From Haliotis cracherodii (lineage: Eukaryota), in assembly GCF_022045235.1 (NCBI RefSeq), contig NW_027266286.1, positions 28,334,001 to 28,398,000 of the forward strand: 64,000 nucleotides of DNA. Reading direction: 5' to 3'. Shown in pieces: positions 4,613 through 36,273 of this stretch. Below the pieces are notes generated by a model. That model searched no databases. It worked only from the letters and a program-made list of their open reading frames with translations, and had not been told where the DNA came from. Both the position numbers and the translations under genes were made by a program. The stretch's first letter is position 1. Each line of letters begins with the position of its first letter.

Positions 4613-7600
4613 ATGGTCAAGTACAAGGGCATACTACTGGTTGGTATGTTCTTGGCTTTCATGACCTCTTCCTACATCTGGTTGGGACAAACAGTTCAAA
4701 ATCGCTGTCCTTTGATACCTCAAAACCTACGTAAGTGGATAAATAATTAAGGCAAATCAAATTGTTGTTTTTTCTTATTATGTTGAAATAACCCCCAGGT
4801 TATGAAAAAATGTTGTACAGTCGACAAACTAAAGAGATAGTTTCGAGAAACGAATAGAGAATTTGGTTACTCAGTGCAGGCTCAATGATGAGTTCACCCT
4901 TGTCAACGGTGTTTGGCACCAGCAGTTTATAACACATGTATGATCAACTTTGAAATGTTTGATAGGCAATACTTAGAAACTCAATATTGTCGAGAAATGC
5001 AAAACAGCATTAGTCGAAATATGAAATCTACATATACTTTAAAGCAGGTTACATTTACAGTATCCATGGGGATCAAAACTTCAAGGGAATCAATGCTCGG
5101 GTTAATTGATAGCTCTTGCAAATGTTATTTATACTGTGTATTTCATAACACTTCGTTTTAATTCTCCTGAAAGAACTGTTTATCAAACTGATAAATGATG
5201 ATTGCTCTGATCACACAGGGATGTAACAATGTCAAAGTTTTAAAAATTGAACTGTTACAAAGCCTTGTCCTAGAATAAAAAAGACATTTAAAAATAGATG
5301 GTAAACTTAACTTTAAGACGACCGGTTTGTTTTATCAGGACATGTATCATGCAGATGAATGTTTCAGTGGGGGCTATTTCACCACGGATGAAAGCTTTGT
5401 CTTTTGAGGAACTGGAAAGGCAACATACAGAACTAAATCTTGGTGGTCGATTCACACCTCTGGGTTGCATAGCTCGTCACCGAGTGGCCATTATTGTGCC
5501 CTATCGCGACCGAGAGTCCCATCTCAAGGTTCTCCTCAACAACCTTCATCCCATGTTGCAACGACAGCAACTAGATTACGGCATCTACGTCGTGGAACAG
5601 GTAAAATTATTTCAAATATCTATGAGGAAACTCACGCTCTTGGACACACATGGATAAAAATCAAATTCAACATTCTAGACGATTACGATTAGGGACATAA
5701 AAAAACACAAGGAGTAATTACTCTGGTCAATTAAATAATGAATCCAAACAGGAATGGAACGAGCCACCTAGGGATTCACAGTATACATAAAATATTATTA
5801 AAACACACCAATACCAATAATGATATATATAGTTTATGTAACTGATGCTGTTTGAATTGAATTGGGAATATCCATATTGCAGGCTTTGCCAGTCACATTC
5901 AACAAAGCCACAATGATGAACGTAGGATACACAGAGGCATTAAAGGACTTTGACTTCCAGTGTGTTATTTTCCACGATGTGGATCTCATCCCCGAGAATG
6001 ACAATAACCTATATACTTGTCCTGTGAATCCACGTCATATGGCAGTTGCTACTGACAAGCATAATTACAAGTAAGTATCGGTGGTGAAATGGTCTAGAGG
6101 TTAATGCGATCGCTTGTCATGTACATGGTCCTTGTTTGATTCCTGGTGTAACAATAGACTGGCACGGGCAACCTATTTCTTAAAAACGTGTCTTCATTGT
6201 ATTGTTTCAACATTACACGTCATATGTCACAGATTGCCTTCGGTTAATAAGTTTAGTTCTTTTTCAATAAATCCGAGGCGACACCAATTTTTCTTGTTTA
6301 CGCGTCCGTGACCAAGGCAAAATAAGGATACTATATATGACAATTAAAACTTTATTTTTCAATACCAGACCGATCCTTGTGTCTATTAAGTACACTGGTA
6401 TTTGAATAAAAATTAAACATTCCGATCAACTGAATAAACATACACAATGAAATCAAACCCAGATACTCTTTGAAAGTCAGAAGAACAATGTCAAACAGTG
6501 CTCAAACCAATAAAATGGCAGCACATTTTATTTCGACCGACCCACTGTTAATGGTGATAGGAAAGTAAACGCAGAAAAACCGTTCTGAAAAAAATAGCTT
6601 AAACTATCAGCATGTCAATATTCCCGTCCGACTGTCCTCCCGTTTCAATATCCAAAATAAGAGTTCACTCACAGTTAAAAAATATGGATTGGAAAATCTT
6701 AATGTCATTAGACTGAACCTGTGTATTATTAAGTTGCTGCACTTGCTGCTGAAATAAATACCAACGCCAACCGTACTGGCAGAGAGTATGACAGACGGTG
6801 GTGTAATTAGATTACAATAAAGACTAATGGAGGATATATACATGTAACTGTCAGACACCCATCTGTCTGTCAGTCGGTCCGCCTCTCGTTTTCTATTTCC
6901 TGAGCATAAATCAAAATGAGTTGATCAGTTTTGCTTGTATTGCTCATTCTTTGCATTTTCAAATTGAATAAATCATGTTTAAAATTATGGTTGTATTTGG
7001 TAGAGACGCGGGGTGGTTTATTTTTAAACATAATGTGTAGTCATATGGTTCCAGAAGCGTTCAGACTACCAGTTGAAATGCTGCAAACAGTACAAGTTGG
7101 CTGGTTATAAACAACTACATCAACACAAAATTGGGAATAAGACATATATACGCATTTATCTACATGACGAAACGAATCTGGGATCTATGCATTTTCAACA
7201 GAGTCAGTCTTTGCATTACAGTTAATGTGTTCGTGACATAAACTAAACACGTCAATATTCGCGTTGAAGAGTTATTTTTCATTTATGAATTAACATGTTT
7301 ACGGTACAGCAATTTGCTGTACTTTGATGCCTCCATTAAGGAGTGACAGAAACCCCTTGTGGGTTCCAATCCAGATTCGCCCCGATTAGGATCATTACGA
7401 TAAGCATGGAATGCTTTGGACCATTGCTTTTGTTAAAAAGGAAGATGTAGCAATCAGCGACATGGCGATTCAATCCTGTTTTGGACTGACCAATTATCCA
7501 CCTACATTCCAATAACCATACATGTGGGGAAAGTGATTGTGACCATATAGGCAAACGCAGACCTTGCAAGCACAGCAAGACAACAAAACCGTCTGTCCCC

Positions 7601-10600
7601 TCAGGTTACTCGAACCTTATCTTAGACGCTCGGCCAAGGGGTTTGAAATCTAGTTGACCATTAATCATGGCTTAGAAAAAACAGTTGGTTCTGTCGGAAC
7701 CTGCTGCCCTGGCGGCCATATCGCACGACAATCGACAACGACATCCCCAATCATAATATACGATGGTCACACCATTCACAACGCCGAAGTCAGTAATATT
7801 CCAGCTTTATCATGGCGCCCTGTAAATAAAAAACAGTGGTTGATATCATTTGAAAGTCACACAACGTTGGGATACGATGACAATCAATCAGCCAAATTAT
7901 CAATCTCCAATCTAATCTGTTTATATTGCGCCGAAGTTTCAGTTTAACTGTGCACAGGCACTATACATGCAACATATATACATCATATACACAGAATGCT
8001 CATTAAGAAATTGTTGCTACAGGAATTCAGAATTGGGAACTGGTAAGTTTTAAGATTTTTCGACATGATGCTGGCGTTTCTGATAATTTGGTGTGTCCTG
8101 GAACGGATTTCACCTGAAGCAACCCATAGTTGTTTTGCCCTGGGTCTTTTATCAGAAGCTCTTCATCTTGTGAAAGCAGTATATTGTTCCGACATATTTG
8201 CGCAATTTACTCAATAATAGAGATCATCTTGTTACGCAATCTCTGACAAACATAATTACTGATTACCACAGTAAAAATCCGGGGTAGAATAGGTCTTCCG
8301 CAACCCATGCTTGCCGTAAAAGGCGTCTATGTTTGTCGTAAGAGGCGACTAAAGGGGTCGGGTGGTCAGGCTCGCTGACTTGGTTGATGCATGTCATCGA
8401 TCCCAAGTGCGTGGATCGATGTTCATGATATTAATCACTGGATTGTCTGGTCCAGACTCGATTATTTACAGACCGCTGTCAAATAGCTGGAATATTGCTG
8501 AGTGCAGCGTTAAACATCAAACCAAGCAATCAATCTTACAATAAGAGGCTGGGGATAACCGTTCAGTTCTTCGAGTTAAAAAATAATGAAGTTTGCAGTC
8601 AAGTTTATAAAAGTTCTTAAGTGATCATGAGTTGATTGAAACTTTGTAGAAGTTCGAAAATATTTGTCTTCGATTAACTCTTGTAACATGGATGTTGATT
8701 TTGTAAGACGGTCATTGATATTGGACTATCGATATGTGCAACAGTCCTCATATATTTTAGCACATAAAAGTAGGCTTGAAATGGCAAGGTTAAAATCCAG
8801 ACTTTGATCAAGCTGACCTTGGAAAGAGGTGGTGGCATCATGCATCCACGGTTTCAGTGTCATAACATCATAGAAGATGTTATCTCACTTAACTCCATCA
8901 TCCCTACTCGTCACAGAAAATAAGAGCTGGTCAATTACCATATAGTCTGATTATTTGATTATAATATTCGTTCGCACAGACTGTTCTATAACGGCGCATT
9001 TGGCGGAGTGCTCGCACTTACCAAGGAACACATGAACAAAGTCAATGGCTTCTCTAATAGATACTTTGGCTGGGGTCTGGAAGATGACGACATGTTGAAA
9101 AGGTAAGGTCGTGGTTTAATATGAATAGAAATGCTTCATTGCATTCATAGTGTTTGTCAAATCAGATATTACAAACTTATATGGTGTTTTAAAATTTAAA
9201 AAAATATCTTCCTTAAGCGCCTCCGTGCAATGTTGTTTTATAAGGTGGAATGCAAACAGATAATGACTTTGGTCGCTGAGGAAGTAAGAGTGAGTTCGAA
9301 TCCCCATAGTTATATTATGAAAATATATGAGCAATACGTTTGTGCAGTATTTGGGTATTTCTTGCTTGTTATATTATAACGTCCCTTTCACACTGGCATG
9401 CAAACTGTACGGTGCAAACTTACAACATCCCCGAACATTTTACATAATGATTTCTTTTTTCAGAGTTAGATACAGTGGATTAACATTTAGTAGACCACCA
9501 GCAGAAGTTGCTCGGTACAGAAGTATATTACACAAGCGAGACGAAACAAATCCAGTAAACAAGGATCGGTAAGTTGAAGGTGATGAGATAAGTTATTAGA
9601 ATGTTTTATCGACGATCTTACTGAAATATGAAAAAAACATAATATTACAGCAAAAGGTAACCACTCAGTGTAAGGGTGTCCTCGTATTTTAAATGACAAG
9701 AACCACAATACCTGAAGTATATCATCATCCTTTACCAATCAGCAAGATCCGTGAGATCAGAACACAACCTGAATGGTTGACAGTACATTTTTGGCTGCTG
9801 CGCCTGGTCTGTAGAACATACACCCACTTCGCCTTGAGAAATTCAAAAGAGATGTTCAAACGTACGTTTATGTAACTTTTCCATTGTAATTGCCTGTTTT
9901 ATTCCCGTGACTGAGCAGTACTGGTTGGATATAAGCCGCTATGTTGATTGGTTCGGTAAGATAACTGGCGTTGGTTCGTGAGTATGTAGCAATCAGATCA
10001 GTGGCGGAATTTTAGGCAATAGTAAACATGACAAGGGGAAACACTTTTCGTGCACCGACCTTTACATGTACAACAGACCACATTTCCTGTGTATGCTTGC
10101 GTAATTCTCATCCCATACTGAATTGGTTCCGCTACCAGTTTTTATCTCAACTGGGCCGAAAGGCCAATTTGTCCGTTTTTGACGTTTTGGCTGATGGATT
10201 CAGCTGAAATTTTTCTGGATGTTTGTTGCTATAAGGGGGTGCAAGTTTGTTCAAGGTATCACTTTTGAATTTCAGTATCGCCGCCAGATACGCATCTTTG
10301 ATTTTTTGTTTTTATCTATTCATAAATCTTCTTCTACAAAACTTGAAAGGCCAGTGATTTGAAACTGATCTGTCAGAAATTGTTTGCTGAAAATCTTGAA
10401 GGTTGAGGTCAAATGGGCAAATTCATTTATCATCCAAAACTGGCTCCCACAGGAGATATCGCTTGGGTGAGATCAAGCGATATCTATACTGTAGATATCG
10501 CTGCAATGAAATTGCATCACAATGCTTTGCAGACCATTGTGACGTCATTGGTTACCATGGCGTCACAATCAAATGACATCACTAATGGCTCTGCTACTGA

Positions 10601-12425
10601 AGCTGTTAGCAGTACTTTTTATACTTAAGACACTGTTTATTACTTTCTACAAACTGAAAAAAGTTGGAAGAATGATGTTGGATGATAAATAAAATCTCAC
10701 CCTCATGTCTTTTGATATCAAATATATCAACACTCGTTGATAAAAGCAAGCCTCGGAGTTTTCCCACTTTTATCAACTCGTGTTGATATATTTGATATCA
10801 AAAGACACTCGGGTGAGATTCTCTATATCTCCAGCGAGAATGTCACGAGACTCCATTTCGAAGGATTCGTTCACAAATGTTCTGTGAGGAAGCAATTCAC
10901 ATATGCTCTCAACAAAAGTTGTGGATGCTCGGAGGTTAACTTAAAATTTCAAACATTGTAAGAGATAATAGCTGTATGATAATTACGAACTGGGAACACG
11001 ACACAACCGGAAGTGAAGTATTACAGTAGATTTTATGACCACCAATGATCGTAAGATGATCCCGTTAGTCGCCTCTTACGACAAGCATAGTCGGCTTTTA
11101 TGGCAAGCATGGGTTGCTGAAGACCTATTCTCCCCCGGATCTTCACGGGTCAGTTGCGTTTGAATCCCAAGTTGGGTGAACTATGATGATAAGTTTGTCT
11201 GTAGAGTTTGAGACGCGTGAAGATTCCGGGGTAGAACAGGTCTTCAGCAACCCATGCTTGCCGTGAAAGGCGACTATGCTTGCCGACTAACGGGATCGGG
11301 TGGTCAGGCTCGCTGACTTGGTTGATGGATGTCATCGATCCAAATTGCGTGCATCGAGGCTCATTATGTCAATCACTGGATTGTCTGCTCCATACTCGAT
11401 TATTTACAGACCGCCGTCATATAGCTGGAATATTGCTCAGTGCGACGTTTAACAACAAACAAACAACTCTGCATAAAGTATTGCTGCATCTTAGTCAACT
11501 TGAAAAACTATCTACTATCTGTCTTTTTTCGATCAGACATAGTAAGAATGGTAAAAAAGAACTACTTGAGATATGGAAATACTTGTAAGAAACAAACCTA
11601 TGGAAGATATTGAAACGAAACCTCATGGACCTGTATGACAGAATAAGTATGAAAATTGGATTGATTTCATGCAACATATTTAAGGACTTTGTAATTGGGT
11701 TTTTGTGTCCTGTCTTTCATTATTGAGTCTTGTCAAACTGTTTCTTTTGAATAAGATAATTTATTATCTTTATGTCATGTACATGTGCTCTATACTTTTT
11801 GTTTTGGTAAATCATGAGAAAAGTAAAGACCACACATAAACTCATTGTTTGCCTCACTCATGTGTGACTTTTCAAACAATTCAGCCTGGTAGTGAAATAG
11901 ACTCAACAAAGAGCAACGGAATAATTTAGGTTGATGAACTTGATGCATCTAATTCTGTGTTTGATAATAAATCACCCTCTATGTCGATGAGGGAGCGTGG
12001 GTGGCCCAGTTGTCTACGGCTGTGTTAAAAGCGGCGTTAAACCCAACTCACTCACTCACTCACTATGTCGATGACACATTCCCATAACTAACCGGCCACT
12101 ATTTCCTGACTTGTTATTGCGATGGGGCTATGAATATTTCATGCTTTTTTATTTTCAGAGTAAAAATTATAAAACAGGTTGCCAAAGGCATGAAAACCGA
12201 TGGACTAAATTCACTTAGCTATGAATTACTGAAAAAGGAGTACAGAAAACTGTACACCTGGATCTATGTGAAGATAAATAGAAGGTGAGGACACTCAGTA
12301 TTTTTTTCAAGTTCGATATGTGAAATGTGGTAAAAGCAAGTTCCACCATCTGTTGCAAAATTACAAATGATAATGATGATTTGCTTTCTTTCCCAAACAG
12401 ATCTGATTTTCCTGAGAACACATGA
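4613..12425 (+). CDS. GT7 beta-1,4-glycosyltransferase (B4GALT/bre-4-like), paralogue 1, about 305 aa, 7 coding exons
   Basis: Exons 4613-4730, 5368-5600, 5883-6070, 8980-9102, 9464-9568, 12159-12284, 12401-12425, all GT-AG and in frame. If the last intron is retained the stop is at 12288 (298 aa). N-terminal anchor [16 protein letters not shown]; motifs [39 protein letters not shown]. Probable 5' UTR exon donor at 4221 and acceptor at 4539; AATAAA at 12676. Confidence 0.92.
8273..8533 (+). mobile_element. SINE-like family 2 (non-tRNA structured head, (AAAC)n-type tail)
   Basis: CCGGGGTAGAATAGGTCTTC...GTCGTAAGAGGCGACTAA...GGTCAGGCTCGCTGACTTGGTTGA...GGAATATTGCTGAGTGCAGCGTTAAAC. Confidence 0.85.
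10693..10820. repeat. Long palindrome, probable end of a non-autonomous DNA element
   Basis: AATCTCACCCTCATGTCTTTTGATATCAAATATATCAACACTCGTTGATAAAAG ... CTTTTATCAACTCGTGTTGATATATTTGATATCAAAAGACACTCGGGTGAGATT; arms of about 54 bp. Confidence 0.7.
11060..11466. mobile_element. Two family-2 copies head-to-head (11060-11150 minus, partial; 11211-11466 plus, full)
   Basis: Consensus matches in opposite orientation 60 bp apart. Confidence 0.85.
11991..12062 (+). mobile_element. Internally deleted family-3 SINE (head fused to tail)
   Basis: GGGTGGCCCAGTTGTCTA joined to TGTTAAAAGCGGCGTTAAACCCAACTCACTC; TSD CTATGTCGATGA. Confidence 0.8.
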
Positions 12426-14193: not shown

Positions 14194-14348
14194 GTGATTA
14201 AGTGAGTTTAGCTTTCAGCAATATCTCAGCCATATCACGCCGGGGGACACCAGAAATGGGCTTCACACATTGTACCCATGTGGGGAATAGAACCCGGGTC
14301 TTCGGTATAACAGGCGAACGCTTTGACCACTAGGCTACCCCCACTGCC
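14194..14348 (-). mobile_element. SINE family 1 copy
   Basis: Same consensus; TSD AATATCATTTCGA. Confidence 0.85.
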
Positions 14349-14590: not shown

Positions 14591-17500
14591 TTAAATCTGT
14601 AAACGAAAAGGACTTAATCATAATCAACAGCTCGTCAAACAATGTTTATAATTAGCTATATCTGCAGTGGACATACACATGTAGTTCTTATTCTTTCAGT
14701 TTGACACATGCAGCACTATGACACGGCCTACAAATAAAAGTCAGGACCATTCAAACCAGTGGTCAATATTATCAGCAACGTTCCACGATCGACTAAGATG
14801 ATACACAATCAAACAAATCACTGAGCCTGATATGTGCCCGATTTCGTATAGTCGCCTTATAGGCTCCCGGACAAGTATAGGTTACTGGGAACGAATGTGA
14901 ACATGGAATTAAAAGACATGGACATGAACAACTACGTAATGTTGAAAAGAAAAATTAACACATCCTCACCTCATGTTTGTCATCAACTTGTACATAGACC
15001 CAGGTGTACAGTTTTTTATACTCCCTTTGCAAAACATTATAACTGAGTGTATTTAGTCCATCGTTTGTCATGACTTTTTCTGCCTGGTTAAAAAGTTTAA
15101 ATCTGAAAAAGATCAAGTGTAAGATACATGTACTTTATATATGTGTCTTATGACTGAGTTAGTGACAGAGTTTGATCTGTTAGCAATATTCCAGTAATAT
15201 CGCGCAGGCAGCTCAACTGCTCCAGTACAAGCATCATTCTGATTGGCGCATTTTCATGAAATGATCCTGGAAACACAGAATACAATAGCACGTTTATTCC
15301 ACTTCACTTCCAGTTACAGGGGCGGTCGGATAGCCTGGTGGTTAAAGCGTTCGCTCGTAGCGCCGAAGACCCGGGTTCGATTCCCGACATGGGTACAATG
15401 TGTGAAGCCCATTTCTAGTGTCCCCTGTCGTGATATTGCTGGAATATTACTGAAAGCGCGGGACTGAAACCATACTCATTCACTCACTTCCAGTTTCAAT
15501 CAGCAGACTAATTGATAATAATAATCATGCATCCACAATGAGCTCAGCCGTTTGGACCACACCTTTCCTCTTGCACCCTCCCCCCAAAACTTCCTTCGTC
15601 ATGCAATTGCATCACAATACAATAAAATATATATACATTGAACATACACAATACAGAATTAAAATACAAACGAAGCTCGCGCCTCAAGAGAACTAGAAGA
15701 AGTGAATAGCATGCGACACGTATAACATGTAGACTATTTGAAAATATACCGTAATATATGCTTTGTTAAAAATACTAATTGCAAATCTGAGCTCAAAACT
15801 TAATTATTTAGTTACAACATACCAATATTTAATATATTAAGGTTATTCGTTCGATGAAGGGGTAAGCATATACTCCGAAACGTTGTGTTTCTCATTATAA
15901 AGAAGTTGACATCCATAAATTCTCATCCTTATGTGTATCACTTCTAAATGCCTGATACCAATATTTGTTTACTGGTTCCGTGTCACATCATTCCTGGGAT
16001 CAATTAGTATGTAAATGGATACGATACATTAGAAACGTTATACAGTTGAGTAGTAACTGATTCGCGTTTATTCGTAGTTAGTTTAAGATTTGGATGAAAT
16101 AACTTTTTATTTAACACCATAAGCAGCAATAGTCCAGCTTTTATGACGGCGACCTATAAATAAACTAATCCAAGTGGACCTAGCAATACAGGGATTTATA
16201 TGAAGAGCAACGATCAACGTCGTCGTGGTACATAGTTGGCTGGAGACTCGTTCCAACCAGGATTCCACTCAGCTTTACATACATAATTTCCCATTCTGAT
16301 AGAGTGTGAACATCCCAAGTGAGCCCTTCCTTTACAACCTACCGAGATTTGTTCAGTGGATTTGTTGCGTCTCTATTGTGTTTTATCATCCTGTATCGAG
16401 CAACGGTTGCTGCGGGGCGAGACATTACCAAACCACCTTTTTTAATTCTGGAAAAAGAAATCAAGTGAACGACATAATGAGAACACTGCAAGAATCTTAT
16501 TGACGATTCGTAAGTCTCCATATCAGTGTTAACTTTAATCCGATCATCTATGCTGTTTGCAATCCCTGCATGATGATTTGATGCGGAAATATGCGGCAAT
16601 CCAATGTAGACTTCAATAAATCATCTGTTTCAGTATTGAGGCCTCAGTCCCAGGTTCAATCAATACAATGAAGGTGCAACAGCAAATATTTACAATTGTA
16701 AAGATCGGAGATTGACTGCATCTTTAATGTAATTTACGAAATGTTTTAGATTGATAACATCGGAGAATTGCAGCAGTGTTATAAAACTATCGCTTCGATT
16801 AGCATAAGTATGGTCATTGAAAAATGGGAAATATTTAGAACGAATATTTACATATGCGAAACATATCAATACAAAATGAATTTTCTTTTCAAGTACATGT
16901 AAGTTCCAAAATGGACAAAACCAATGTGTCTTATCGATGCCCATTCTCCACCCTATATTATGCACAATTTCAAGTTCACTAATCCTAAATAAGGATGCAT
17001 AGGTCCAGGCCGTCTACAAGGGTGGCTTAACTTCGGTTAACCTGAAGTTGTCAGATGACCTTTTCTCTCTGGCCTCTTTCAAAGTTAATGGTAGAATTTT
17101 GATATCCATTTTTATACATAAAACCTATATGTACATAGCCTGCAAGTTGACTTTCATATAATGTATATTGTAAGCATGCACAAAACCTACAGTTTGACAG
17201 TTACGATAAATGAAACACCCATGCAATGTGCGCCTTAGTATATTTCTATGATAATAGGGACTTATTCAACTTCATAACGTTCCCGAGACAAGAGGAACAC
17301 CTGTGAATATGATAAGGTTTTATCTGTCTGATTCAAAACGTTTCAAAGAGAATAGAACAACGCACACAACGTCCACCATCAAACTCTAATTCTAGCTGCA
17401 GTTACTCTTTGCGTTGACAGGAAGTATTGTCTTTGATGGAACGTTTTTAACAAGAAACCAAGTGCCTAAAAGAATATTGTTCCTCCGGGTATATCTGTGA

Positions 17501-20500
17501 GTTACTATTTTTCACTCTTGTTAAAGGAGTGCATCAGAGAAGTCTTAGGGAACTAGAAATAATCAAATATAAAAATGTATATTTGACAGGCAAGCACAGT
17601 GCATGAATGTTTAGTGCCTTGATATGTGCATATAGGAGTCAAGAATTTACACGCTATAACCCGACAACCTAGACACTGCTACTCAGTATCACGAGCCAAG
17701 CCAGCTCTTACCCCAAACAGGGTGTGTTGGGGACCCAATCTGTCTACGATTTCGCGTATGACTAAAAAAGGTCATTTTTGGCTTGGACGTGATATTAAAA
17801 ATAATATACAACGAAGGGATTCCAAATTGGATTAGTATGCCTAATATGCATGCACATCTATGGGAATCTAACGAAACATTGGTGTTGAAATTATACCACA
17901 ATCTTACCTTTTCAACATGTCATCATCTTCCTTGCCCCAGCCAAAGTATCTATTAGGGAAGCCATTGACTTTATTCATGTGTTCTTTGGTTAGAGCAGTC
18001 ACCCCTCCAAATGCGTTTTCATAATTAAGTCTGTGTTAAAAAGAATATTGTAATTAAATACATACTAGTTCTATAGTACATCTTGACAATTCAAATGTGC
18101 TCAGATGTTTCGTTATAAGTGTATAATATATGTTCGAGGGAGTGCTTTGCAAGATAAGTGTATGATATATGTTCGAGGTAGTGCTTTGCAAGATAACCGT
18201 ACGTTTGTTTCATTGCAGGATAGCCTCGCACTCAGCAATATTCTGGCTGTTTCGACTCTGGACAAAGCAGTCTGTTACTGTTCAAGACATGTATGTCTAC
18301 GTATAAGCAATAGAAACGACAAAACCCTTTCCATACTCAATGGAAAAGTTTAGCCATCGATTCCAGATCGGAATCCCTCAGCAACATAGGTTTGTCGTCC
18401 TACTGATAAGTTATAATAGCAATACCAAACACGGGTTTACCTTGAATACTGCTGAGTGCATTGTTCAAAAACAAACTATCATACAAAATACCATGTTTAA
18501 CAATTCATTTTCATTGCATCCTGGTAAGTAATACATCCACCAGCAAGTAATGACGAATTGGACTCCTATTTGAATGTATAGTGAAAAGCATTAACTTTGC
18601 AAGGCGTTAGAGAATAACAGCATGCAGTTGCAATCTGATACCATTCGGATCGAGAAATACATGCATACGGCATCCATCTTCCCGAGGCAAGAGAGTTAAC
18701 TGACTTTAAAAGTCCAGTTTCCGCACTTGCCAAACTAGGCTGGTATTATGGAGTTACATTTTGGCTGGGCTAACGAGTCTATGCATAGTCCAATCAAAAT
18801 CGCGCACCGAATTCGAAATCCGGTTCGTAAACTGTCGTGCAGATTTCGGTCGATCGCAGGATTTGCAAAGCATGTGCACCGCCAACTCATTGTCAGCAGA
18901 CATTTTCCAAATCTTTTCATGTTTTTAATCAAGGTGATCACGTGATTTGATGCATTTCGCAATGTAAGACCCGTTTTATCACAATATAGTACTTGATTAT
19001 CGATCCAATTGTCCTGACTGGGCGCCACCATTTTGTGTGAAGCAAACACAAGTGACACGTGAAGGGGAATCTGATTGGTCCATAGGAGAGGTTTAGAAGG
19101 TACATAACTGGTAATAGCCACTGGTGGCGCTACGATCGAGCCCAGTAATTCCAGCCTATTTCGGCAAAGGTGGAAACTGGACTTTTAAAGTCAGTTAACT
19201 CTCTTGCCTCGGGAAGATGACGGCATCCTGAAACCAGTTTAAGTACCATGCTTCATGCTAACATAAAGGGGAATCTAAATGCACTTCCGGTCAAATGACA
19301 AAACTTGCAGCCTGAGGAAACCCGTGAACAAAACCTTGAAAGTCACAGTCCTCTCGCTATTCGTGTACATTAGCGTTTCAAACTAGAACGCCATATGCCT
19401 CTCTACTTCATGAGCAAGAAGTTGTATGCACTTCATGATTGGGACAAAAACAAACATCTCATGGACGATTTAAACTGTATCACATTTCTCTGACTAGCTT
19501 CATAAGAAAGTTGTATTCAGTTCTTTAATTTCTTTCAAAGAGGACGTCCTATGCCCCGAGCAGTGTTACATATACACTACGGGTTTAATGACATACTTGA
19601 TTATTTCTAGTTGGTTACATGGGTGCACCAACACACTTTACACCACCATTAGCTATTGGTTCAGATCACATAGAGGCGTAACTTCTTTCAAATGACCATT
19701 CCAGCGACCTTGACCTTGACTTTCACCCACCTTACCACTTCAACCCAAATATGATAATCTTCCAAATTTCATGACAATCACGTGGCCTTCAACCACCCAA
19801 AAAGCAATAAAATACTTACTTATAATGAAACTTGTCAATGGAAACTGACAAATGAAGTGGATTCTCAGGACATGTATACAGGTTTTTGTCATTCTCTGGA
19901 ATGAGATCCACATCGTGGAAGATAAAGCACTGAAAACCATAGTCCTTCAGTGCTTCTTTGTATCCAATGTTCATTAACATGGCTCTGTTGAAAATGGTTG
20001 GTAAAGCCTGTAATGTCCAAAATGTTCCAACATCATCATTCTAAATGTTATTTCTTTGAAACCACCAGATGTCACTTTATATTATAAGATGTCTTTAATT
20101 ATCAAGTTACATGTACAATGAGCCCAAGGTCATCCAAACAAGATTCCCGGATTATTCATTCGATTCCTGGTTACAGAGCCTCTGAGTGTGGTATCACTCC
20201 AATGTGGTGTCATTGTATGTCACAGAAACAGTGTGGATAAGTTCCTCATACCAGCAAACGCTAAATAGGCCAAACTGGGCTTTGTAAATATTAAGGTCAA
20301 TGAAAGAGATCCAGATTTTCAAGGTAAACTGATGTTTTTTCAAAGCCTCTACCCGTTCACCGACAATAACAACCACGTGTTTTTCAAACAATAATGTCGG
20401 TCCACTTGATTCGAGAAAACGTACTGGCTTATATTTTGAAATGCATACCTTTTGGGGGGTATTTGGAAATATTCTTTCCACCAAGGTTACAAGTGGTAAT

Positions 20501-27283: not shown

Positions 27284-27335
27284 TCATGTGCCTGAATTTA
27301 AACTGATTTCGCCTGATATGTCTTACTAGACACAA

Positions 27336-28901: not shown

Positions 28902-31900
28902 CTAAACTTGACCATTCGATTCATGAGGTAGGAATCTGTTGGGGAAAGCAAACGAAGTAATGACAATGTCAACATTTTTCAACCGTTCATCAATTTCCGG
29001 CATATACCTTGAAAACATAGGACTCTGTTCTGATAAAAGAATAAACTTCGAACTCACCTTTTTTCACCAACCTGCGCATAGACCCAGGTGTACAGTTTTT
29101 TATACTCCTTTTTCAGTAAGTCATAGCGGAGTGAATTTAATCCATCAGTTTCCATGTCTTTGGATACCTGCCGTATGAGTCTGAATCTGAAAAGCATCAA
29201 GTATACGTTACATAAGAGAGAGAATGTCAACTTCCTTATTATGAGGAACACGACGTTTCGGAGTATATGCTTACTCCTTCATCAGGTGGATCACTTCTAA
29301 TTGCCAGCCAACGACTTTATACGTAACATGTACGTGAAGTAAAAATATACGTTATTTGTACTTGAATATGTGGATATTTTGACCTCCCATATGTTGCGAA
29401 CCAGAAGGAATTGAACTGTTTGACAAGCATTTTAAGTAACAGTAAAGACAGGTCTTTTTTATGGATGACAACTTCTTTATTCAATTATGATGTGACTTTT
29501 TCGGTGCAGATCCTTACACCGGGCGTTTTGCATGGCAAATTATCATCCACTATTGTAAATTTCAGTATTTGATGTCATTGGTATTTGTCCAATTGCATGT
29601 GTCCCTAAGTTTCACATTCACCCAGAATACTTGTGGTAAGGACTAGAACAGTGAATGTCTCATGATAAAGGGGTTAACCCTCTGCACTTTGGTTCTTTTG
29701 TTAAACTGTTTAACACGTGTATTCCATATAACTATGCCATGAATTAACTTACGGCTTATTATGTGAGTTATTGAGTTATGTTGATTTAGGCTGTATTGCA
29801 TCGAGACTGTACCAGACATATCAGGGTCCAGTGGCACATAACCTCACGCAAATGTTGATGCATTTCATCTTTAATTTTGTGTCAGGGACTTTGTTTCCCG
29901 CCATGTGCTTCTTTAGAAGCAGGTCGTGACTTTGACCTTATATATACGGATGCTATGTGTACTGTATATTCGGTTATATGAAAGAAGCAGCAAGATCCAA
30001 GCACTATTTCTCAATACCGGTGTATGATTTATACCAGATATATTTATTTGACTTAACACAAACATATTTATCCTTTTGAAAACATTCAAATGATTTCCTG
30101 ATGTCTAAATAAGGGATACGGACAGCTTAAGTGGAGATATTTAATGACTTTTTCAAGTTTTTTTGTTTCCAATTTAAGACAAAAATGTTTCTGACTGAAA
30201 TTCTGCAAAATATATTAGCTTCGCTTTGTGTCATTGCGTTTGCTTGACTGCAAATTTAAGCTAAGAACTCCATGGGGACCCGGGGTAGAATGTGTCCCCA
30301 ATACACCATTGCTTGTCGTAAAAGTCGACAAAACTGGGCAACCCGTTTGCCGTGGCTTGCGCCGCTATGTCGGTGAAGGAAGTGATTCTGGTGACCATAT
30401 GTCATCTTCGACTGAACTGCAGTGAATTTAAGTTTCAGTCCTGTGTACAAAGGATTAAATGTGTGCAAAGGATCAGCTATACCGATGCCCGGAAACAAGC
30501 AAACTTAGTTACAGCTGCAAACACAACAGGGAATTGTTATGCTTCCGTAGTTAAAACAATGAAAACGGTTCAAACAGCATCAGCTCTCTGTCAGACAGAT
30601 ATATGTCATTGACAGTGTGAGACATGCCAAAGCACGTTTCTGAAATTGAAATTAACCAACCTGAAACAAACCATGTTACAGCTTTAACATCAATCCCTGT
30701 CAACCTCAACATCAAAAGAAACAACCCCAAAAGCTATAGCAATAACAATTGTTGCAAGACCTAAAAAGAATTAAAACTGACTGAGTGCCAAAGGCACTCA
30801 AAGATCTTGTGCTACTCTACAACAGGTATGGATTGTTCGAGAATATGGATACGGAAGTATCCCGTCACGTGAGCACTGGTGGTCATACAAGTGATCACTC
30901 TTCCCAAATGAAAATCAGGAGTCGATCCCCTGTTACTCCACATTCATGAGTAACACATATGATTAATTCAGTGGAATTGCAGAGGTCTCAGGACCATGTT
31001 TTATTACTACAAACTGTTAAAAGCGGCGTTAAACCCAACTCACTCACTCACTCAACTTGTTTTAAAATCGAAACTGTGAAAATCTAGTTATCATTCTGCC
31101 CATGGATGCCAGGTTTTCATTCAATCTAAATATATTCATTATAAAATGTTTAAGTTCCTGTCACGATATGGCGGAAATACTGCTGATGTGACGTTACCTT
31201 TTAACTCACTCACTCTTACCGCTTATCCCTTCAGCTACAACGTACCTGTCCTTGTTTACTGGATTTGTTTTGTCTCGACTGTGTTTTATCGTCCTGTATC
31301 GAGCAAATATTTTTGATGCTCGAGTTATTTTTAAACCACTGTGTTTAAGTCTGAAAATAGAAATACATAGTTTACTATAAGTTCTTTCTCGACGGTTAAT
31401 GCGACTGAACATTAGATTTTAACTTCATTCCTTTACGATCCTTTCACAGCAACAAATGCCTATCGTAATAGTTATATTTCTCCACATGTTTTACATAGCT
31501 TTTTTTCATAATGGTGGGGAATGTAACGTTTTACCCAAGAGCTAACAGAAAATGCACCGAAAGTGGCAATTTGTCTATCTGTCATTTCACTAAGACCAAT
31601 TGCTGGACCTGTGAAGATCCGGGGTAGAATAGTTCTTCAGCAATCTATGCTTTCCGTAAAAGGCGATTATGCTTGTCGTTAGAGGCGACTAACGGGATCG
31701 GGTGGTCAGACTCGCTGACTTGGTTGATGCATGTCATCGTATCCTAATGACGTGGATTGATGCTCAAGACTCGATTATTTACAGACCGACGTCATATACC
31801 TACAATATTTTACTGAGTGCGGCGTTAAACAACAAACAAACAAACCAATTGCTGAGCACAATGTCCACTCATAATTGAAACTGTAATCCTAGCTGTATCC

Positions 31901-34900
31901 GCTCTAGGTCAACGAAGGTTTCCACAGGACTGTGAGTTTATCGGTGAGTAGGTATGACCGAGATATTGCCTATGCGACGATTGAACTCACGTTCAGGAAG
32001 TGCATTTGAAAAACAAGTGAGGAAACCTTGCTTGAATGTGCCGCAAATGATTTACATTAAAGCAAGACACTCTGATCATTCGCCTTTTCGGCAAAGAAGC
32101 AGTAAATGTTAAGTGTCTTGTTAGCAGTCATTCAGTCTGAGATACTGTCTTTCAAATAGGGACAGTGGAGCGAAATATATACGTCAACTGCAGAGATCAA
32201 CCAGTCTCGATTATCCGTCGAAACAGAATCCATTGGGCGTAAGAGACAGAAAAGCGGTGAAAAATATATGAATGGATCAATGAAAATGAGTCATGACACC
32301 AGGCGTTCGCAACCTTTCTCGCTGCGACTTGGAATGGAGACTGTTATCCGGGTGTCACATATGCAGAAACCACAATCCTAAATACATTGTATCCTTGGAG
32401 CAGTGGTAGACTGCCTTTGTCCAGTCTCCTCAGAGATACAGTACTTCGTAACAATGTCCCAGGACTAATAATCCTGAGGAATTAATGTCAGGTTCTGCAC
32501 TTTGTTCAGGAACAAATGACCGCGCCAAACAAAACTAACACTTTCAGGTGTATCATATGCATTGAGGTGTGTCAGCCAAAGGAATACCTTTGGGGAAATT
32601 ACATACTATAATAGATGGCAGTTCTACAGTTCATGCTGTGATTCTGATTGGACTATTCTAATGAGCTAACAGTGAGTATTCAGATCAAACCACGTTCTTA
32701 CCTTCTGAACATGTCATCATCTTCCATACCCCAGCCATAGTATCTATTTGAGAAGCCATTGACTGTGTTCATGTGTTCTTTGGTTAGTGCGATCACCCCG
32801 CCAAATGCGCCCTGATAGAAAAGTCTGTGTGATAGATAATTGGTTGTTACATTGATAAATGGAATTAAATGAAGATTAATACTATGGGTCTTTTCACTTC
32901 GTATGAACACTTTCTTGATAAGTGTTTTCTTCTCAATTCCAAATTTGAAAAACTTGTCATTCGGCTTGGCGCAATGGATACCTTCACTATTTATAAGAAC
33001 AACTTCAATTTAGTTTCATCGGGGTTCAGGTGTCACGGAAGAACGTGACGTCATCCATGGTATCATCACGCGGTTAGCTGTCAGGATAAACGTAACGTGT
33101 AAAGCTAAAATCATTACGCTTGAGGACGTTCTCAAATAGGAAATCCACGTAGGTTTACGCGTAACGCACTTGTTACACGCAAAGTTGCCTCTTACGTATA
33201 AGCTAGTAATTGTATGCACAAAGGTAGTTGTTTAATTAACGCATAAACGTAGTTGCCTAACGCGTAGAGGTAGTTGTTTTACGCGTAAATCTAAATTCAT
33301 CACACGTTAATGGTTCAAACAATAAATACTCAATGTTTTATTACGCTTATTACACATTTCGTGGAATTTTCATGTCTTTAGACTTGAATATGACCATTTG
33401 CATTTAAACTGTGTGCATGACAAGAGTGGGAATACATTGCATCCCTATTGGTCTCATTATTTGTACAGAGTACAATATTTTACGATGCTGCAATCTGTCT
33501 TGTAAAACTAAATCAACAGCATTAGGATCAAACTTTTATACATAATGAATTACATGTACGTTACCAAAGGCCTACTTATGTTGATTCAACTACAGATAAT
33601 TGTGTACACCATCTATATAGTGTGTGTAAGGGGATTATCTGATAAGGAGGCGTGTGATTGTGACAACAGTGCCAATAATGTTAACAAGGGAGAGATTATA
33701 TAGATTCACGACAAATGTGACTTATTTGACGATTTTACAAGAAGTAAAACTCGAGGTAAATAAAAGAAAATACTAACTTATACTGATGCTTATCAATGGC
33801 AACTGCCACATGACGTGGGTTCTTTGGACAGGTGTACAGGTTCTTGTCATTCTCTGGGATGTGATCCACATCATGGAAGAAAAAGCACTGGTAGTCATAT
33901 TCCTTCATTGCTTCTGTGTAGCCTATGTTATTTAACATAGCTTTGTTGAAAATGCCCGGCAAAGCCTGTAATACGTATGTCCACAATTTGAAACACCATC
34001 AATCAAAATGTTTTATTTCTCTTAAATAAAAGCGACAAAACCCTTCGTTTCCATTATCATATGAAATATCTTCTGAAAGCAGAGTCCGTTGTACGATTCA
34101 GACTACATCATGAGCATGTGTTTATGAATCACTATCAAATAGTAGTGATACCAGGTGATCGCGACATCCTTTTGGTCACTGATGCATCAAATTTAAAAAT
34201 GTCGTTCACATTTCTACCATAAAACTTGTGCTGTAAGCCTGATCAAATAATTTTAAGCAAGAGTCTTATGACGCTCTTTGAAATCGTTGTGGAAAGTTAT
34301 GAAATCTTGACACCATAGACTGTAGCTGCTGGCATATGGCCCAACATAAAGGAAAAGTAGACATTTGGAAGGCGGTTCCATTGGTAGCCTTCATTTCTAG
34401 CTCAGGTTGGCTAACTTAAAGTCATATTATTTTGCCAATCCATGAAGAAATTCCGATTCATCTGTATAAAGAAGCATTTTAGTGGGGAGCACAATTGGTA
34501 CCCATGGGGATGCCTACTTCTTGCCTAAATGTCTTATCTGAAAAGAAATCTCTAGGTTCTTGGTTTGTTTCTGAGACTGCAAATATTCAAGCAAATATTT
34601 TAAGCCTTCGAGAAACCACACGGTATTAATTTTACTTGTCTGAAATACTTTCTCTGACTATAAACAAAGGTTTTCCTTATTCAATTTGTATTACGAACTA
34701 TTGTTGATCTTTGAGACAGGGATTTCTTGATGTATTTACTGGAACCATCAATATATATCTCTTTGTACGTAAGGAGCTTTGGAATCTCGTACAAAAGTGG
34801 TATGGACATGTCTTTAGGTTTTAGAATGAAGCCCAGAAGATGATAGTACTGATGCGTGCCTTTGGCAGATTTCCTCCTCAGTCAACATACTGGCCTTATT

Positions 34901-36273
34901 AGTGGCTTTGTTTGTTATGTAACTTATACCATGTTCTTTGATCAAACAATTAATGTACGTGTAAAAACCTGTACACATCTACTTGATTTGCGAATATCAA
35001 TAACCAAATGTTAAAGTTATAGGCATGTTTCTATACTAATTTCGGCAGTTCCATCCACTGTGAACGTGTGAGGCAAAGGCCCAGGGTGGATCAACTGTTA
35101 AAAAGACTTGACATACAAGATTTACCTGTTCCACAACGTAGATGCCATAGTCTAGTTGCTGCCGTTGCAACATGGGGTGGAGGTTGTTGAGGAGGACCTT
35201 CAGGTGGGACTCTCGGTCGCGATAGGCAACAATGATGGCCACTCGGTGACGGGACTTACAATCGGGAGGTGTGAACCGACCACCGGGTTTGAGTTCTGCA
35301 AATCGCCTTTCAAGTTCCTCAAAAGGGAGAGCTTCCATACGTGCGGTAATATTTCCCACTGAAACATAGATAATCATGAAACAATCCCGTTTCCAAAAGC
35401 AGGCGGTGAATGGTTAAACATTAAGACTTACTGGAGTCAATGAATTGAGTTACAGTCCCATTGACCAATATTTCAGATATGGTATATAAGCTTAATGTTG
35501 GAAGAAGCCGTAGTAATGACATGGTGCTGACAAACCAATGGTCATAATCTGTGAAGCATGACCAGTGGACATGACATGACGCACCTCTGCACAACTACAT
35601 GTACTTATGCAGTATTGCAGGCGGTGACATATGATTCCCCATATGTGTACAGTGTGTTAAATGCATTTCTAGTGTCCCACTGCCGCTCTACGTCTGCACT
35701 ATTGCCAAAAGCTTCGAAAAACTCTACTTCTGCAATATTCATTTGTTTATTGTACAAATATGTTTATTGCTTTCGAAAGAGACAAATACATCTCACCTCG
35801 ATAAATTAGGTTTAAGGCGATCATTGTCCACGAGGAGGCCTCTTCAATCATTAAACCTACTTAAATTAGTGCCACATATGCTGCCTTCTCTGCGACCGCA
35901 TTTTATGTTCAAATATTCCACTGTTATATGATCAACCATGCTACACATCGTTATCAGTACCAACGTGAGAAAGAGATAAGTTTATTTTGCCCTGACTATA
36001 TGTCCACTTACCTAAGTTTGGTGGCACCTGAGGACACAGATTCGGAACCGTGTCATCGCCATTGAAAGAGTCTGGCAACGTTTTCATACTTGATGCACCT
36101 TTCGAAATATTACTCCACTGACTTAGCAAAGACTTGCTCGAGTGAAGAGAATAAGTAGACACACTACGTGCACTATTACTGCCAACAGTCAATCCCAAAT
36201 GTTTGCATTCGAAGTAAATGAATAACAAAGCGAGACAAACACAGATCCGAAGTGAAGCCTTGTGAGGGATCAT
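28902..36273 (-). CDS. GT7 beta-1,4-glycosyltransferase (B4GALT/bre-4-like), paralogue 3, about 357 aa
   Basis: Exons 36273 (or in-frame ATG 36294)-36012, 35358-35126, 33965-33778, 32824-32702, 31350-31246, 29186-29058, 28935-28902. Read-through alternative stops at 29054. Motifs AYRDR, FNKA, FHDVD, AFGGV, YGWGMEDDD, YRTIKH. Probable 5' UTR exon donor near 38439; AATAAA (minus) at 28818-28813. Confidence 0.92.
29249..29289 (-). ncRNA. Minimal type-I hammerhead ribozyme motif (Penelope-associated type)
   Basis: CCAC-CUGAUGA-A-GGAGUA(agcaua)UACUCC-GAAA-C-GUC-GUG: intact core, 6-bp stem II, loopless palindromic stem III, 3-bp stem I. Confidence 0.6.
30265..31054 (+). mobile_element. Internally deleted I/Nimb-like LINE relic (structured 5' end, ORF1 remnant, possibly 3' tail)
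   Basis: The 5' end matches the family-2 head. ORF 30352-30612 contains VQRIKCVQRISYTDARK...YASVVK, typical of an I/Nimb ORF1 C-terminus. A shared (ACTC)n tail lies at 31010-31054 but may be a separate insertion. Confidence 0.55.
31606..31843 (+). mobile_element. SINE-like family 2 copy
   Basis: TSD ACCAATTGCTG defines the 5' end at GACCTGTGAAG. Confidence 0.9.
34100..34950 (-). mobile_element. Degenerate reverse-transcriptase relic (Penelope-like)
   Basis: Minus strand 34517-34482 encodes VGIPMGTNCAP (RT motif B); surrounding frames are broken. Boundaries approximate. Confidence 0.5.

What the first reader, a model, noticed from the sequence alone, without database searches (positions are those of the whole stretch)
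4613..36273. Three-gene GT7 cluster with non-canonical sugar-donor residues (Ala289; Lys or Arg228): candidate GlcNAc- and GalNAc-transferase set
Seen: aligned to bovine B4GALT1 LPYVQY289FGGV, the paralogues read [20 protein letters not shown] and LFYQGAFGGV, so all have Ala at 289. At FNR228A, paralogues 1 and 3 read FNKA and paralogue 2 reads FNRA. Established: Tyr/Phe289 selects UDP-Gal and Leu/Ile (bre-4, Y289L) admits UDP-GalNAc. R228K raises gluco-donor use, and the snail Lymnaea has a GT7 enzyme that uses UDP-GlcNAc. Inference: paralogues 1 and 3 may be beta4-GlcNAc/Glc transferases and paralogue 2 a GalNAc transferase. Ala leaves an even larger pocket, which might accept bulkier C2-substituted donors. 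The cluster could be a co-located, lineage-specific glycan-building module that automatic annotation would simply label bre-4-like.
Basis: partly seen in the sequence, partly recalled or inferred. Interest (0 to 1): 0.75.

Follow-up and report, generated by a model that had tools for sequence, protein, structure and literature searches.

The report
Abalone GT7 sugar-transferase cluster, altered donor pocket
Three neighbouring, intact and transcribed genes for Golgi sugar-adding enzymes belong to an abalone-only branch of a well-known enzyme family in which the residue that normally chooses the sugar has been replaced by a much smaller one, so they may add an unusual sugar, but which sugar remains untested.

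Summary
The window holds three intact seven-exon GT7 genes: P1 at 4613-12425 (+), P2 at 23196-14716 (-) and P3 at 36294-28902 (-). Three database proteins named Haliotis cracherodii "bre-4-like" thread through them exactly.

A gapless HMMER alignment to bovine B4GALT1 puts Ala at Tyr289 in all three. Lys sits at Arg228 in P1 and P3, and Arg in P2.

New here:
- Ala289 is rare. It occurs in 15 of 223 motif instances among the 341 GT7 proteins fetched: 14 Haliotis and 1 tick.
- It marks one Haliotis-only clade of 13 rows from four species (SH-aLRT 95). That clade is nested among Ile289 gastropod GalNAc-transferase-like proteins.
- All 14 Haliotis Ala289 proteins also lack Gly316, the hinge of the Trp-loop.
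- The cluster has a fourth member about 38 kb past the window. Two more Ala289 genes lie on the same contig.
- The paralogues are under purifying selection (dN/dS 0.30-0.36). Spliced P1 transcripts and P2-like transcript pieces occur in public runs.

Which sugar each enzyme transfers was not tested. The GlcNAc versus GalNAc assignment remains a hypothesis. I class this as a new variant of a known kind, of moderate interest.

The parts
4613..12425 (+). P1: GT7 gene with 7 coding exons (4613-4730, 5368-5600, 5883-6070, 8980-9102, 9464-9568, 12159-12284, 12401-12425). It encodes 305 aa with almost no stem region. Donor-pocket residues are K228, A289 and L316.
   Evidence: Database protein P0219 threads exactly through these exons, with GT..AG at every intron. 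Pfam PF13733 and PF02709 match exon by exon. The spliced joint 12282>12399 is seen in contigs of 3 of 4 runs laid.
14716..23196 (-). P2: GT7 gene with 7 coding exons (23196-22929, 20823-20591, 20007-19820, 18030-17908, 16447-16343, 15102-14970, 14727-14716). It encodes 353 aa. Donor-pocket residues are R228, A289 and K316.
   Evidence: Database protein P0336 threads exactly. Pfam matches. Contig pieces like P2 cover exon 4 (17908-18036) and exon 6 (from 15103).
28902..36294 (-). P3: GT7 gene with 7 coding exons (36294-36012, 35358-35126, 33965-33778, 32824-32702, 31350-31246, 29186-29058, 28935-28902). It encodes 364 aa. Donor-pocket residues are K228, A289 and M316.
   Evidence: Database protein P0258 threads exactly. 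HMMER alignment to B4GALT1 chains.
8996..8998 (+). P1 codon GCA = Ala at the Tyr289 position
18012..18014 (-). P2 codon GCA = Ala at the Tyr289 position
32806..32808 (-). P3 codon GCA = Ala at the Tyr289 position
5904..5906 (+). P1 Lys at the Arg228 position (FNKA)
   Evidence: the coordinate is worked out by hand from the offsets
19984..19986 (-). P2 Arg at position 228 (FNRA)
   Evidence: the coordinate is worked out by hand from the offsets
33942..33944 (-). P3 Lys at the Arg228 position (FNKA)
   Evidence: the coordinate is worked out by hand from the offsets

Best explanation
**What they are.** The three genes are active, Golgi-type (type II membrane) inverting beta-1,4-glycosyltransferases of family GT7. 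They belong to an abalone-lineage expansion that descends from the invertebrate beta4-GalNAc-transferase (bre-4 / beta4GalNAcT) stock.

**Shared mechanism (inferred from homology).** They should work like B4GALT1:
- Mn2+ is held by the DVD motif and His347.
- The UDP-sugar binds first.
- The short Trp-loop and the long C-loop then close over it and create the acceptor site.
- Asp318 acts as base for transfer to O4 of a terminal GlcNAc. The N-acetyl pocket residue Arg359 is kept, position 360 is Phe or Val, and position 363 is Ile or Phe.

**What is special.** The donor-sugar pocket is remodelled:
- The gate residue Ile/Leu289 is Ala.
- The loop hinge Gly316 is Leu, Lys or Met.
- P1 and P3 also carry Lys instead of Arg228.

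**My committed reading (inferred).** All three still use UDP-HexNAc donors. P2 (Arg228) is mainly a GalNAc-transferase. P1 and P3 (Lys228) have relaxed C4-epimer selectivity and therefore more GlcNAc (or Glc) transfer. The paralogues differ mainly in acceptor choice, because the exon that encodes the C-loop is the fastest-evolving part.
For: **Family and fold**
- Pfam PF13733 and PF02709 match above cut-off, exon by exon.
- P0219 matches bovine B4GALT1 chains at E about 1e-79, with a gapless 247-residue alignment.

**Catalytic residues kept**
- DVD, Lys279, Tyr286, Trp314, Glu317-Asp318-Asp319-Asp320, His347 and Arg359 are kept. The Cys residues aligned to Cys176, Cys247 and Cys266 are kept too (alignment; exon translations).

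**Genes intact**
- Exact threading, with GT..AG at all 18 introns.

**Selection**
- Paralogue dN/dS is 0.30-0.36 at dS about 0.53.
- The core block of exon 2 has pN 0.01-0.02 at pS 0.13-0.39.
- Exon 5 (C-loop) has dN/dS of about 0.7-0.94.

**Transcription**
- Spliced P1 contigs occur in 3 of 4 runs laid.
- P2-like exon pieces occur in X1 and X3, and the same joint is listed in X5.

**Descent**
- A Haliotis-only clade (SH-aLRT 97) has an Ile289/Gly316 protein as its first branch.
- Inside it is a 13-row all-Ala289, non-Gly316 clade (SH-aLRT 95).
- This is nested among Ile289 gastropod proteins.
- Orthologue pairs between the H. cracherodii and H. rufescens entries are 94-98% identical.

**Role of positions 228 and 289**
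- PMC7185993, PMC4202792, PMC7943597 and PMC7955280 (passages read).
- Position 316 is the last residue of the 'W-loop', and the C-loop is bovine 345-365 after conversion from human numbering (PMC11734692, passages read).
Against: - No enzymatic datum exists for any Ala289 GT7 that I could find. The effect of Ala is extrapolated from Leu, Ile and Asn mutants of a vertebrate enzyme.
- The R228K effect was measured in a Tyr289/Gly316 background, not in this one.
- A Bombyx enzyme with Ile and Arg already transfers some Gal and GlcNAc (3700, 158 and 66 nmol/h/mg for GalNAc, Gal and GlcNAc; PMC7943597). Residues 228 and 289 therefore do not fully set the donor.
- Residue 316 varies (L, M, K, S, C) even between orthologues: P1 has Leu in one species and Met in the other (labels). 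This could mean relaxed constraint rather than design.
- The 289-316 coupling is not significant once relatedness is allowed for: 10 independent pairs, median sign-test p 0.375.
- P3 expression was not examined.
- The transcript contigs may come from sister species or, for P2, from the near-identical fourth gene.
Confidence: 0.4

Rival explanations
1. All three are ordinary beta4-GalNAc-transferases (LacdiNAc synthases). On this view Ala289 is functionally equivalent to Ile or Leu, since it merely leaves room for the N-acetyl group. Lys228 and the residue at 316 are near-neutral. The paralogues differ only in acceptor, tissue or timing.
For: - The clade is nested inside Ile289 GalNAc-transferase-like proteins.
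- Any smaller residue at 289 (Leu, Ile, Asn) is reported to regulate donor specificity (PMC11734692, PMC7185993, passages).
- LacdiNAc is a common mollusc antenna (PMC8699351, passages).
- The fastest-evolving exon encodes the acceptor-forming C-loop.
- Residue 316 is not fixed within the clade.
Against: - Ala289 is invariant in 14 of 14 Haliotis clade proteins from four species, although paralogues have dS about 0.5.
- By the standard genetic code, Ile or Leu to Ala needs two nucleotide changes.
- Gly316 is kept in 188 of 193 Ile/Leu proteins but in 0 of 14 of the clade.
- The genome also keeps canonical Ile289/Gly316 genes (L002, L003, L004). These could cover the ordinary GalNAc-transferase function.
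Confidence: 0.35
2. The pocket has been re-closed in a different way. The long side chain at 316 (Lys, Leu or Met) takes the space freed by Ala289, so the enzymes prefer plain hexose donors (UDP-Gal or UDP-Glc). This would be an independent, non-vertebrate route to a beta4-Gal/Glc-transferase.
For: - Ala289 and non-Gly316 appear on the same branch.
- A beta4-glucosyltransferase activity of unknown gene exists in a snail (PMC8699351, passage).
- Lys228 favours Glc in the bovine enzyme (PMC7185993, PMC4202792, passages).
Against: - The tools give no coordinates, so whether residue 316 can reach the C2 pocket is unknown.
- The early-branching clade members carry small Ser or Cys at 316, which could not fill a pocket.
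- The coupling is not significant after phylogenetic control.
Confidence: 0.12
3. The enlarged pocket serves a donor, or an acceptor geometry, outside the usual four UDP-sugars. Alternatively the proteins are catalytically weak or regulatory paralogues.
For: - Ala gives the largest cavity seen at 289 in my sample.
- Tyr289 also belongs to the hydrophobic patch at the acceptor/alpha-lactalbumin face (PMC7565966, passage).
- P1 has almost no stem, which is unusual.
Against: - I recall no bulkier natural UDP-sugar known in molluscs.
- All catalytic residues are kept and selection is purifying. This argues against dead enzymes.
Confidence: 0.08

Closest known systems
Invertebrate beta-1,4-N-acetylgalactosaminyltransferases (C. 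elegans BRE-4, Drosophila beta4GalNAcTA/B, Bombyx BmGalNAcT), family GT7
   Same: - Same two Pfam domains and the same catalytic motifs.
- The three genes share one exon plan.
- The clade is nested among gastropod members of this group.
- Public annotation names the genes 'bre-4-like'.
   Different: - The hallmark Ile/Leu289 is Ala.
- Gly316 is replaced.
- Two of the three carry Lys228.
- The expansion is restricted to Haliotis in the databases searched.
Vertebrate B4GALT1 (bovine and human; PDB 1O0R, 1FGX, 2AE7 and others)
   Same: - Gapless alignment over 247 residues, E about 1e-79.
- DVD, Trp314, EDDD and His347 are kept, as are the Cys residues aligned to Cys176, Cys247 and Cys266.
   Different: - Tyr289 becomes Ala.
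- Gly316 becomes Leu, Lys or Met.
- Met344 becomes Ser (P1) or Thr (P3), and stays Met in P2.
- Phe280 becomes His (P1).
- Arg228 becomes Lys (P1, P3).
Engineered B4GALT1 mutants Y289L and R228K (PDB chain 1yro_B reads FNKA)
   Same: The natural proteins combine a small residue at 289 with Lys at 228, the two substitutions reported to broaden donor use (PMC7185993, PMC4202792, PMC7955280, passages). Chain 1yro_B is the best PDB hit of P1.
   Different: - Ala rather than Leu at 289.
- A natural, selected background with a changed Trp-loop hinge.
- Activity is unknown.
Lymnaea stagnalis UDP-GlcNAc:GlcNAc-beta-R beta4-N-acetylglucosaminyltransferase (Bakker et al. 1994), as cited in PMC8699351
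   Same: A mollusc GT7 relative that uses a gluco-configured HexNAc donor.
   Different: The Lymnaea protein that I did fetch (P0212, 377 aa) is a canonical Ile289/Arg228/Gly316 protein.

Membership tests
CAZy GT7 / Pfam Glyco_transf_7N + Glyco_transf_7C | Both Pfam domains above the gathering score | tested here: met
   Tested for P1 and P2. PF13733 scored 72-100 bits (cut-off 27) and PF02709 scored 65-66 bits (cut-off 23), on separate exons. For all three database models, both domains are precomputed.
CAZy GT7 / Pfam Glyco_transf_7N + Glyco_transf_7C | DxD metal site (DVD), the WG-x-EDDD motif with catalytic Asp318, and His347 | tested here: met
   The alignment of P1 to bovine chains keeps all of these. 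The exon translations of P2 and P3 show DVD, GWGKEDDD and GWGMEDDD, and the His of IKH.
CAZy GT7 / Pfam Glyco_transf_7N + Glyco_transf_7C | Type II membrane topology (short tail, one N-terminal hydrophobic span) | tested here: inconclusive
   A hydrophobic N-terminal stretch is visible in all three models. No topology predictor was run.
Invertebrate beta4GalNAcT (bre-4 type) | Ile or Leu at the position of bovine Tyr289 (donor determinant; PMC7943597, PMC7185993) | tested here: not met
   Ala in all three genes.
Invertebrate beta4GalNAcT (bre-4 type) | Phylogenetic placement inside the group | tested here: met
   nested among gastropod Ile289 proteins. The tree was built with the quick method and rooted at the midpoint only.
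Invertebrate beta4GalNAcT (bre-4 type) | Preferential transfer of GalNAc from UDP-GalNAc to terminal GlcNAc | not testable with these tools
   Needs an enzyme assay.
Vertebrate-type beta4-galactosyltransferase (B4GALT1-6) | Tyr or Phe at 289 | tested here: not met
   Ala.
Lymnaea-type beta4-GlcNAc-transferase | Orthology to, or shared donor-pocket residues with, the characterised Lymnaea enzyme | not tested
   The sequence was not found among the 341 proteins fetched.

The most novel reading that the evidence does not exclude
The abalone lineage evolved a natural 'hole' version of the GT7 donor pocket (Ala289 with a rebuilt Trp-loop hinge, plus Lys228 in two sub-lineages). This gives at least some of the six paralogues a donor specificity not seen in canonical bre-4 enzymes. 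Examples would be efficient GlcNAc-beta1-4 or Glc-beta1-4 capping, or tolerance of bulky N-acyl donors. The result would be abalone-specific glycan epitopes and a ready-made biocatalyst for C2-modified sugars.
Probability: 0.3. Interest if true: 0.6.

Novelty: new variant of a known kind. Interest (0 to 1): 0.45.

Why it matters
Position 289 is the textbook single-residue switch between vertebrate Gal-transferases and invertebrate GalNAc-transferases. A clade that has abandoned both states makes the 'one residue sets the donor' rule directly testable in a natural background. That clade has kept Ala through several duplications and four species, and it has also changed the loop hinge next to the catalytic EDDD.

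If donor use has shifted, three things follow:
- It would assign genes to unexplained mollusc activities such as the beta4-GlcNAc and beta4-Glc transferases.
- It would predict abalone-specific glycans.
- It would offer natural enzymes for chemoenzymatic labelling, where Y289L is now used.

If donor use has not shifted, that shows Ala, Ile and Leu are interchangeable at the gate. The interest then moves to acceptor divergence in the C-loop.

Tried and rejected
**Searches that fell short**
- The whole-library phmmer search used P2 exon 2. Most of its best 150 hits were exon-sized fragments. In one search only 37 proteins gave 38 motif instances under the strict pattern, none with Ala. A looser look at the unmatched long proteins then found one Ala (P0054).
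- A region-restricted search around residue 289 with P0258 returned 8 candidates, of which 5 passed: four Haliotis clusters and one Ile-bearing Lingula protein. This method needs shared 5-residue words, so it cannot prove that Ala289 is absent elsewhere.
- I could not obtain the Lymnaea GlcNAc-transferase sequence.
- Four key papers were not held: PMC1850938, PMC2365515, PMC2974045 and PMC3610539.
- The search of earlier findings by words gave nothing. By place it gave only an unrelated SINE note.
- No paper found in searches or 57 mentions Ala at this position or GT7 enzymes of abalone. These searches cover only the held library, and supplements were closed.

**Ideas tested and not upheld**
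- 289-316 co-variation. The raw table is striking, but the phylogenetically independent-pairs test is not significant. I report it as an observation only.
- Gene conversion as the cause of the identical 43-residue block in exon 2. I reject it for P1-P3 and P2-P3 (pS 0.39 and 0.29). It remains possible in part for P1-P2 (pS 0.13).

**Steps not taken**
- Structure prediction and fold search were not run. Homology to solved B4GALT1 is unambiguous and the tools return no coordinates for pocket geometry.
- I made no search with a joined spliced model of my own. Exons were searched one by one. Full-length searches used only proteins returned by the database tools.


Full report
**1. What is in the window.**
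The window is an intron-bearing animal sequence, G000 contig C23:28334001-28398000, from a genome of 1.18 Gb.

The DNA pattern for A-F-G-G-V occurs three times against 0.06 expected. Each hit sits in a short exon flanked by other exons that match the two GT7 Pfam domains. One search tested P1 and P2 and gave PF13733 at 72-100 bits and PF02709 at 65-66 bits.

Three database proteins thread through the window at 100% identity, with GT..AG at all 18 introns:
- P0219 (305 aa) is P1, at 4613-12425 (+).
- P0336 (353 aa) is P2, at 23196-14716 (-).
- P0258 (364 aa) is P3, at 36294-28902 (-).

Exons 2-5 have identical lengths in all three genes (233, 188, 123 and 105 nt). My first models, read from the sequence alone, ended one short exon too early. 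The seventh mini-exon of P1 is confirmed by a spliced joint 12282>12399 (GT..AG) in transcript contigs.

The sources name these proteins 'beta-1,4-N-acetylgalactosaminyltransferase bre-4-like [Haliotis cracherodii]'. Orthologues are listed for H. rufescens, H. rubra and H. asinina.

**2.
- HMMER aligns LFYQGAFGGV to LPYVQYFGGV of human and bovine B4GALT1 chains.
- The full P1 protein aligns to bovine chains over 247 residues without a single gap, at E about 1e-79, so residue equivalence is secure. The bovine numbers use an offset I inferred from recalled construct boundaries. That offset is consistent with FNKA meeting the Lys of chain 1yro_B.
- Ala stands at 289 in all three genes. Lys stands at 228 in P1 and P3, and Arg in P2.
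- The best PDB match of P1 is chain 1yro_B, whose sequence itself reads FNKA.

Kept residues:
- DVD, Lys279, Tyr286 and Trp314.
- Glu317-Asp318-Asp319-Asp320, His347 and Arg359.
- The Cys residues aligned to Cys176, Cys247 and Cys266.

Changed besides 228 and 289:
- Gly316 is Leu in P1, Lys in P2 and Met in P3.
- Met344 is Ser in P1 and Thr in P3, and stays Met in P2.
- Phe280 is His in P1.
- Phe360 is Val in P1.

**3. How unusual is Ala289?**
*In this genome.* A PF02709 scan finds about two dozen GT7-type exons. The residue before FGG is:
- Ala in six: the three window genes, L011, L005 and L013.
- Ile in three (L002, L003, L004).
- His in three, Leu in one and Arg in one.
- Tyr in the more distant copies that read AGG or IGG.

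*Among fetched proteins.* The 341 proteins fetched gave 223 motif instances: 137 Ile, 56 Leu, 15 Ala, 9 Tyr and 6 others. Fourteen of the Ala cases are Haliotis proteins. The fifteenth is a long-branched tick protein (P0054).
- The eight best relatives of P1 are all Haliotis (62-100% identity). Identity then drops to 58%.
- A search restricted to the region around 289 found only Haliotis clusters plus one Ile-bearing Lingula protein.

This sample is biased towards near relatives and cannot show absence elsewhere.

**4. Descent.**
I built a 59-row tree (IQ-TREE quick, SH-aLRT support only, midpoint root). The rows were chosen by hand from named hits. No rows were dropped after choice.
- A Haliotis-only clade has support 97.
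- Its first branch is an Ile289/Gly316 protein (P0259, the kind of L004).
- The remaining 13 rows (support 95) all have Ala289 and a non-Gly316 residue (Ser, Cys, Lys, Leu or Met).
- Lys228 occurs only in the P1 and P3 orthologue pairs.
- The sister groups (Patella/Lottia, then other gastropods including a Lymnaea protein) are all Arg228/Ile289/Gly316.

On this midpoint-rooted tree the simplest reading is one Ile-to-Ala change, which needs two nucleotide steps. It is inferred on the same branch as the loss of Gly316, after a duplication in the abalone lineage. The Lys228 state arose later. The P1 and P3 pairs are not resolved as sisters (that fork is drawn open), so one or two changes to Lys are equally possible.

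All six Ala289 genes and the Ile289 sister lie on contig C23. The fourth cluster member (identified as P0334 by its donor-pocket motifs, 90% identical to P2) lies at C23:28436056-28447360. Its second-exon match begins about 38 kb past the window.

**5. Are they working genes?**
- Paralogue comparisons give dS about 0.53 and dN/dS 0.30-0.36.
- The 43-codon core of exon 2 is nearly invariant in protein (pN 0.01-0.02). Its silent sites differ (pS 0.29-0.39; 0.13 for P1-P2). The identity is therefore due to selection, with at most some conversion between P1 and P2.
- The highest dN/dS (about 0.7-0.94) is in exon 5. This exon encodes the long C-loop (bovine 345-365), which closes over the donor and forms the acceptor site (PMC11734692, passages, human numbering +4).

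Transcript evidence comes from contigs of four coded public runs:
- P1 exon 6 joined to exon 7 appears in X1, X5 and X8. There are 0-2 mismatches in exon 6.
- A P2-like exon 4 piece appears in X1 (6 mismatches in 129).
- A P2-like exon 6 piece starting at the acceptor (15103) appears in X3. The matching joint is also listed in X5.

Limits of this evidence:
- These are contigs, so they show presence and splicing, not level or strand.
- The organisms are coded and may be sister species.
- The P2-like pieces could stem from the fourth gene.
- P3 lay outside the stretch and was not examined.

**6. How it most likely works.**
*Shown:* family membership, intact catalytic residues, purifying selection, and splicing of P1.

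*Inferred from B4GALT1:*
- The order of binding is Mn2+ and UDP-sugar first, then loop closure, then acceptor binding.
- Asp318-assisted inverting transfer goes to O4 of terminal GlcNAc.
- The N-acetyl pocket is Arg359/Phe360/Ile363 (PMC7565966, passage). It is kept as R/V/I in P1, R/F/F in P2 and R/F/I in P3.

*Donor choice.* Papers read in passages state the following:
- Y289L makes room for the N-acetyl group, and R228K shifts Gal towards Glc (PMC7185993, PMC4202792).
- Ile289Tyr turns the fly enzyme into a Gal-transferase (PMC7943597).
- The Leu mutant accepts 2-keto-Gal and GalNAz (PMC7955280).

Ala gives still more room, so HexNAc donors should fit. Lys228 in P1 and P3 should loosen the grip on the axial 4-OH. 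I therefore rank the readings as follows:
- UDP-HexNAc donors, with relaxed C4 selectivity in P1 and P3: 0.40.
- All three are plain GalNAc-transferases: 0.35.
- A pocket re-closed by residue 316, favouring hexose donors: 0.12.
- Something else: 0.08.

None of these is tested.

*The 289-316 association.* All 14 Haliotis Ala289 proteins lack Gly316, against 5 of 193 Ile/Leu proteins. The association loses significance when relatedness is controlled: 10 independent pairs, median p 0.375. Residue 316 even differs between P1 orthologues, so I report it as an observation.

**7. Comparison with the known, and novelty.**
The genes are members of GT7. They descend from the bre-4/beta4GalNAcT stock, yet they fail that group's hallmark residue. 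They also fail the Tyr/Phe hallmark of vertebrate Gal-transferases.

The Lymnaea GlcNAc-transferase, the natural precedent for a gluco-donor GT7 (PMC8699351, passages), could not be compared because I did not retrieve its sequence.

In the held library I found no paper on Ala at this position or on abalone GT7 enzymes. Four central papers were not held, and supplements were closed. The supplementary donor predictions of PMC7185993 may bear on this claim.

Verdict: a real, already-annotated gene cluster. It represents a new variant of a known enzyme kind, with a specific, cheap and decisive biochemical test. Interest is moderate at 0.45. It would be higher only if donor use proves to be shifted.

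Noticed in passing
G000 C23:28436056-28447360 (outside the window; locus L011 holds its exon 4): A fourth GT7 gene of the same cluster, on the + strand. It reads YYENAFGGV and GWGK, identified as database protein P0334 by these motifs; P0334 is 90% identical to P2. Two further Ala289 genes (L005 at 11.63 Mb, L013 at 5.80 Mb) and the Ile289 sister (L004 at 5.75 Mb) lie on the same contig.
   Followed up: partly
window 9464-9568, 16343-16447, 31246-31350 (exon 5 of P1, P2 and P3): This exon encodes the long flexible C-loop. It is the fastest-evolving part between paralogues, with dN/dS about 0.7-0.94 against 0.30-0.36 overall. That pattern suggests divergence in acceptor choice or loop dynamics.
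   Followed up: partly
window 4613-4730 (P1 exon 1): P1 has almost no stem. Only about 8 residues separate the membrane span from the first conserved Cys, against roughly 60 in P2 and P3. The catalytic domain would therefore sit close to the membrane.
   Followed up: no
window 14070-14467, 15264-15462, 15861-16059: These stretches show summed contig depths from thousands up to several 100,000 in all four runs laid, with many loose ends. They are members of very abundant, transcribed repeat families, located beside and within the 3' part of P2.
   Followed up: no
Several lie inside introns of the three GT7 genes. It is not the element at the very high-depth places.
   Followed up: partly
window 1288-3131 (-): Two long open frames (291 and 368 aa) that I read by eye as integrase-like and retroelement-like; no search was run on them. 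They look like a retrotransposon remnant just upstream of P1.
   Followed up: no
L001 (G000 C7:14195924-14199151): An intronless 318-aa open frame whose motifs recall B4GALT7, reading FVGG and GWGREDDE. If it is active, GT7 enzymes would tolerate a large residue at the position of Gly316.
   Followed up: no
L016, L018, L019 (G000 C45, about 55.4 Mb) and L020: Another local GT7 expansion carries His at the 289 position (YKYHFGGV, with T/MWGGEDDD). One further copy carries Arg. These are more non-canonical donor gates in the same genome.
   Followed up: no
window 60819-60963: A run of 145 N (gap or masked stretch). I left it untouched.
   Followed up: no
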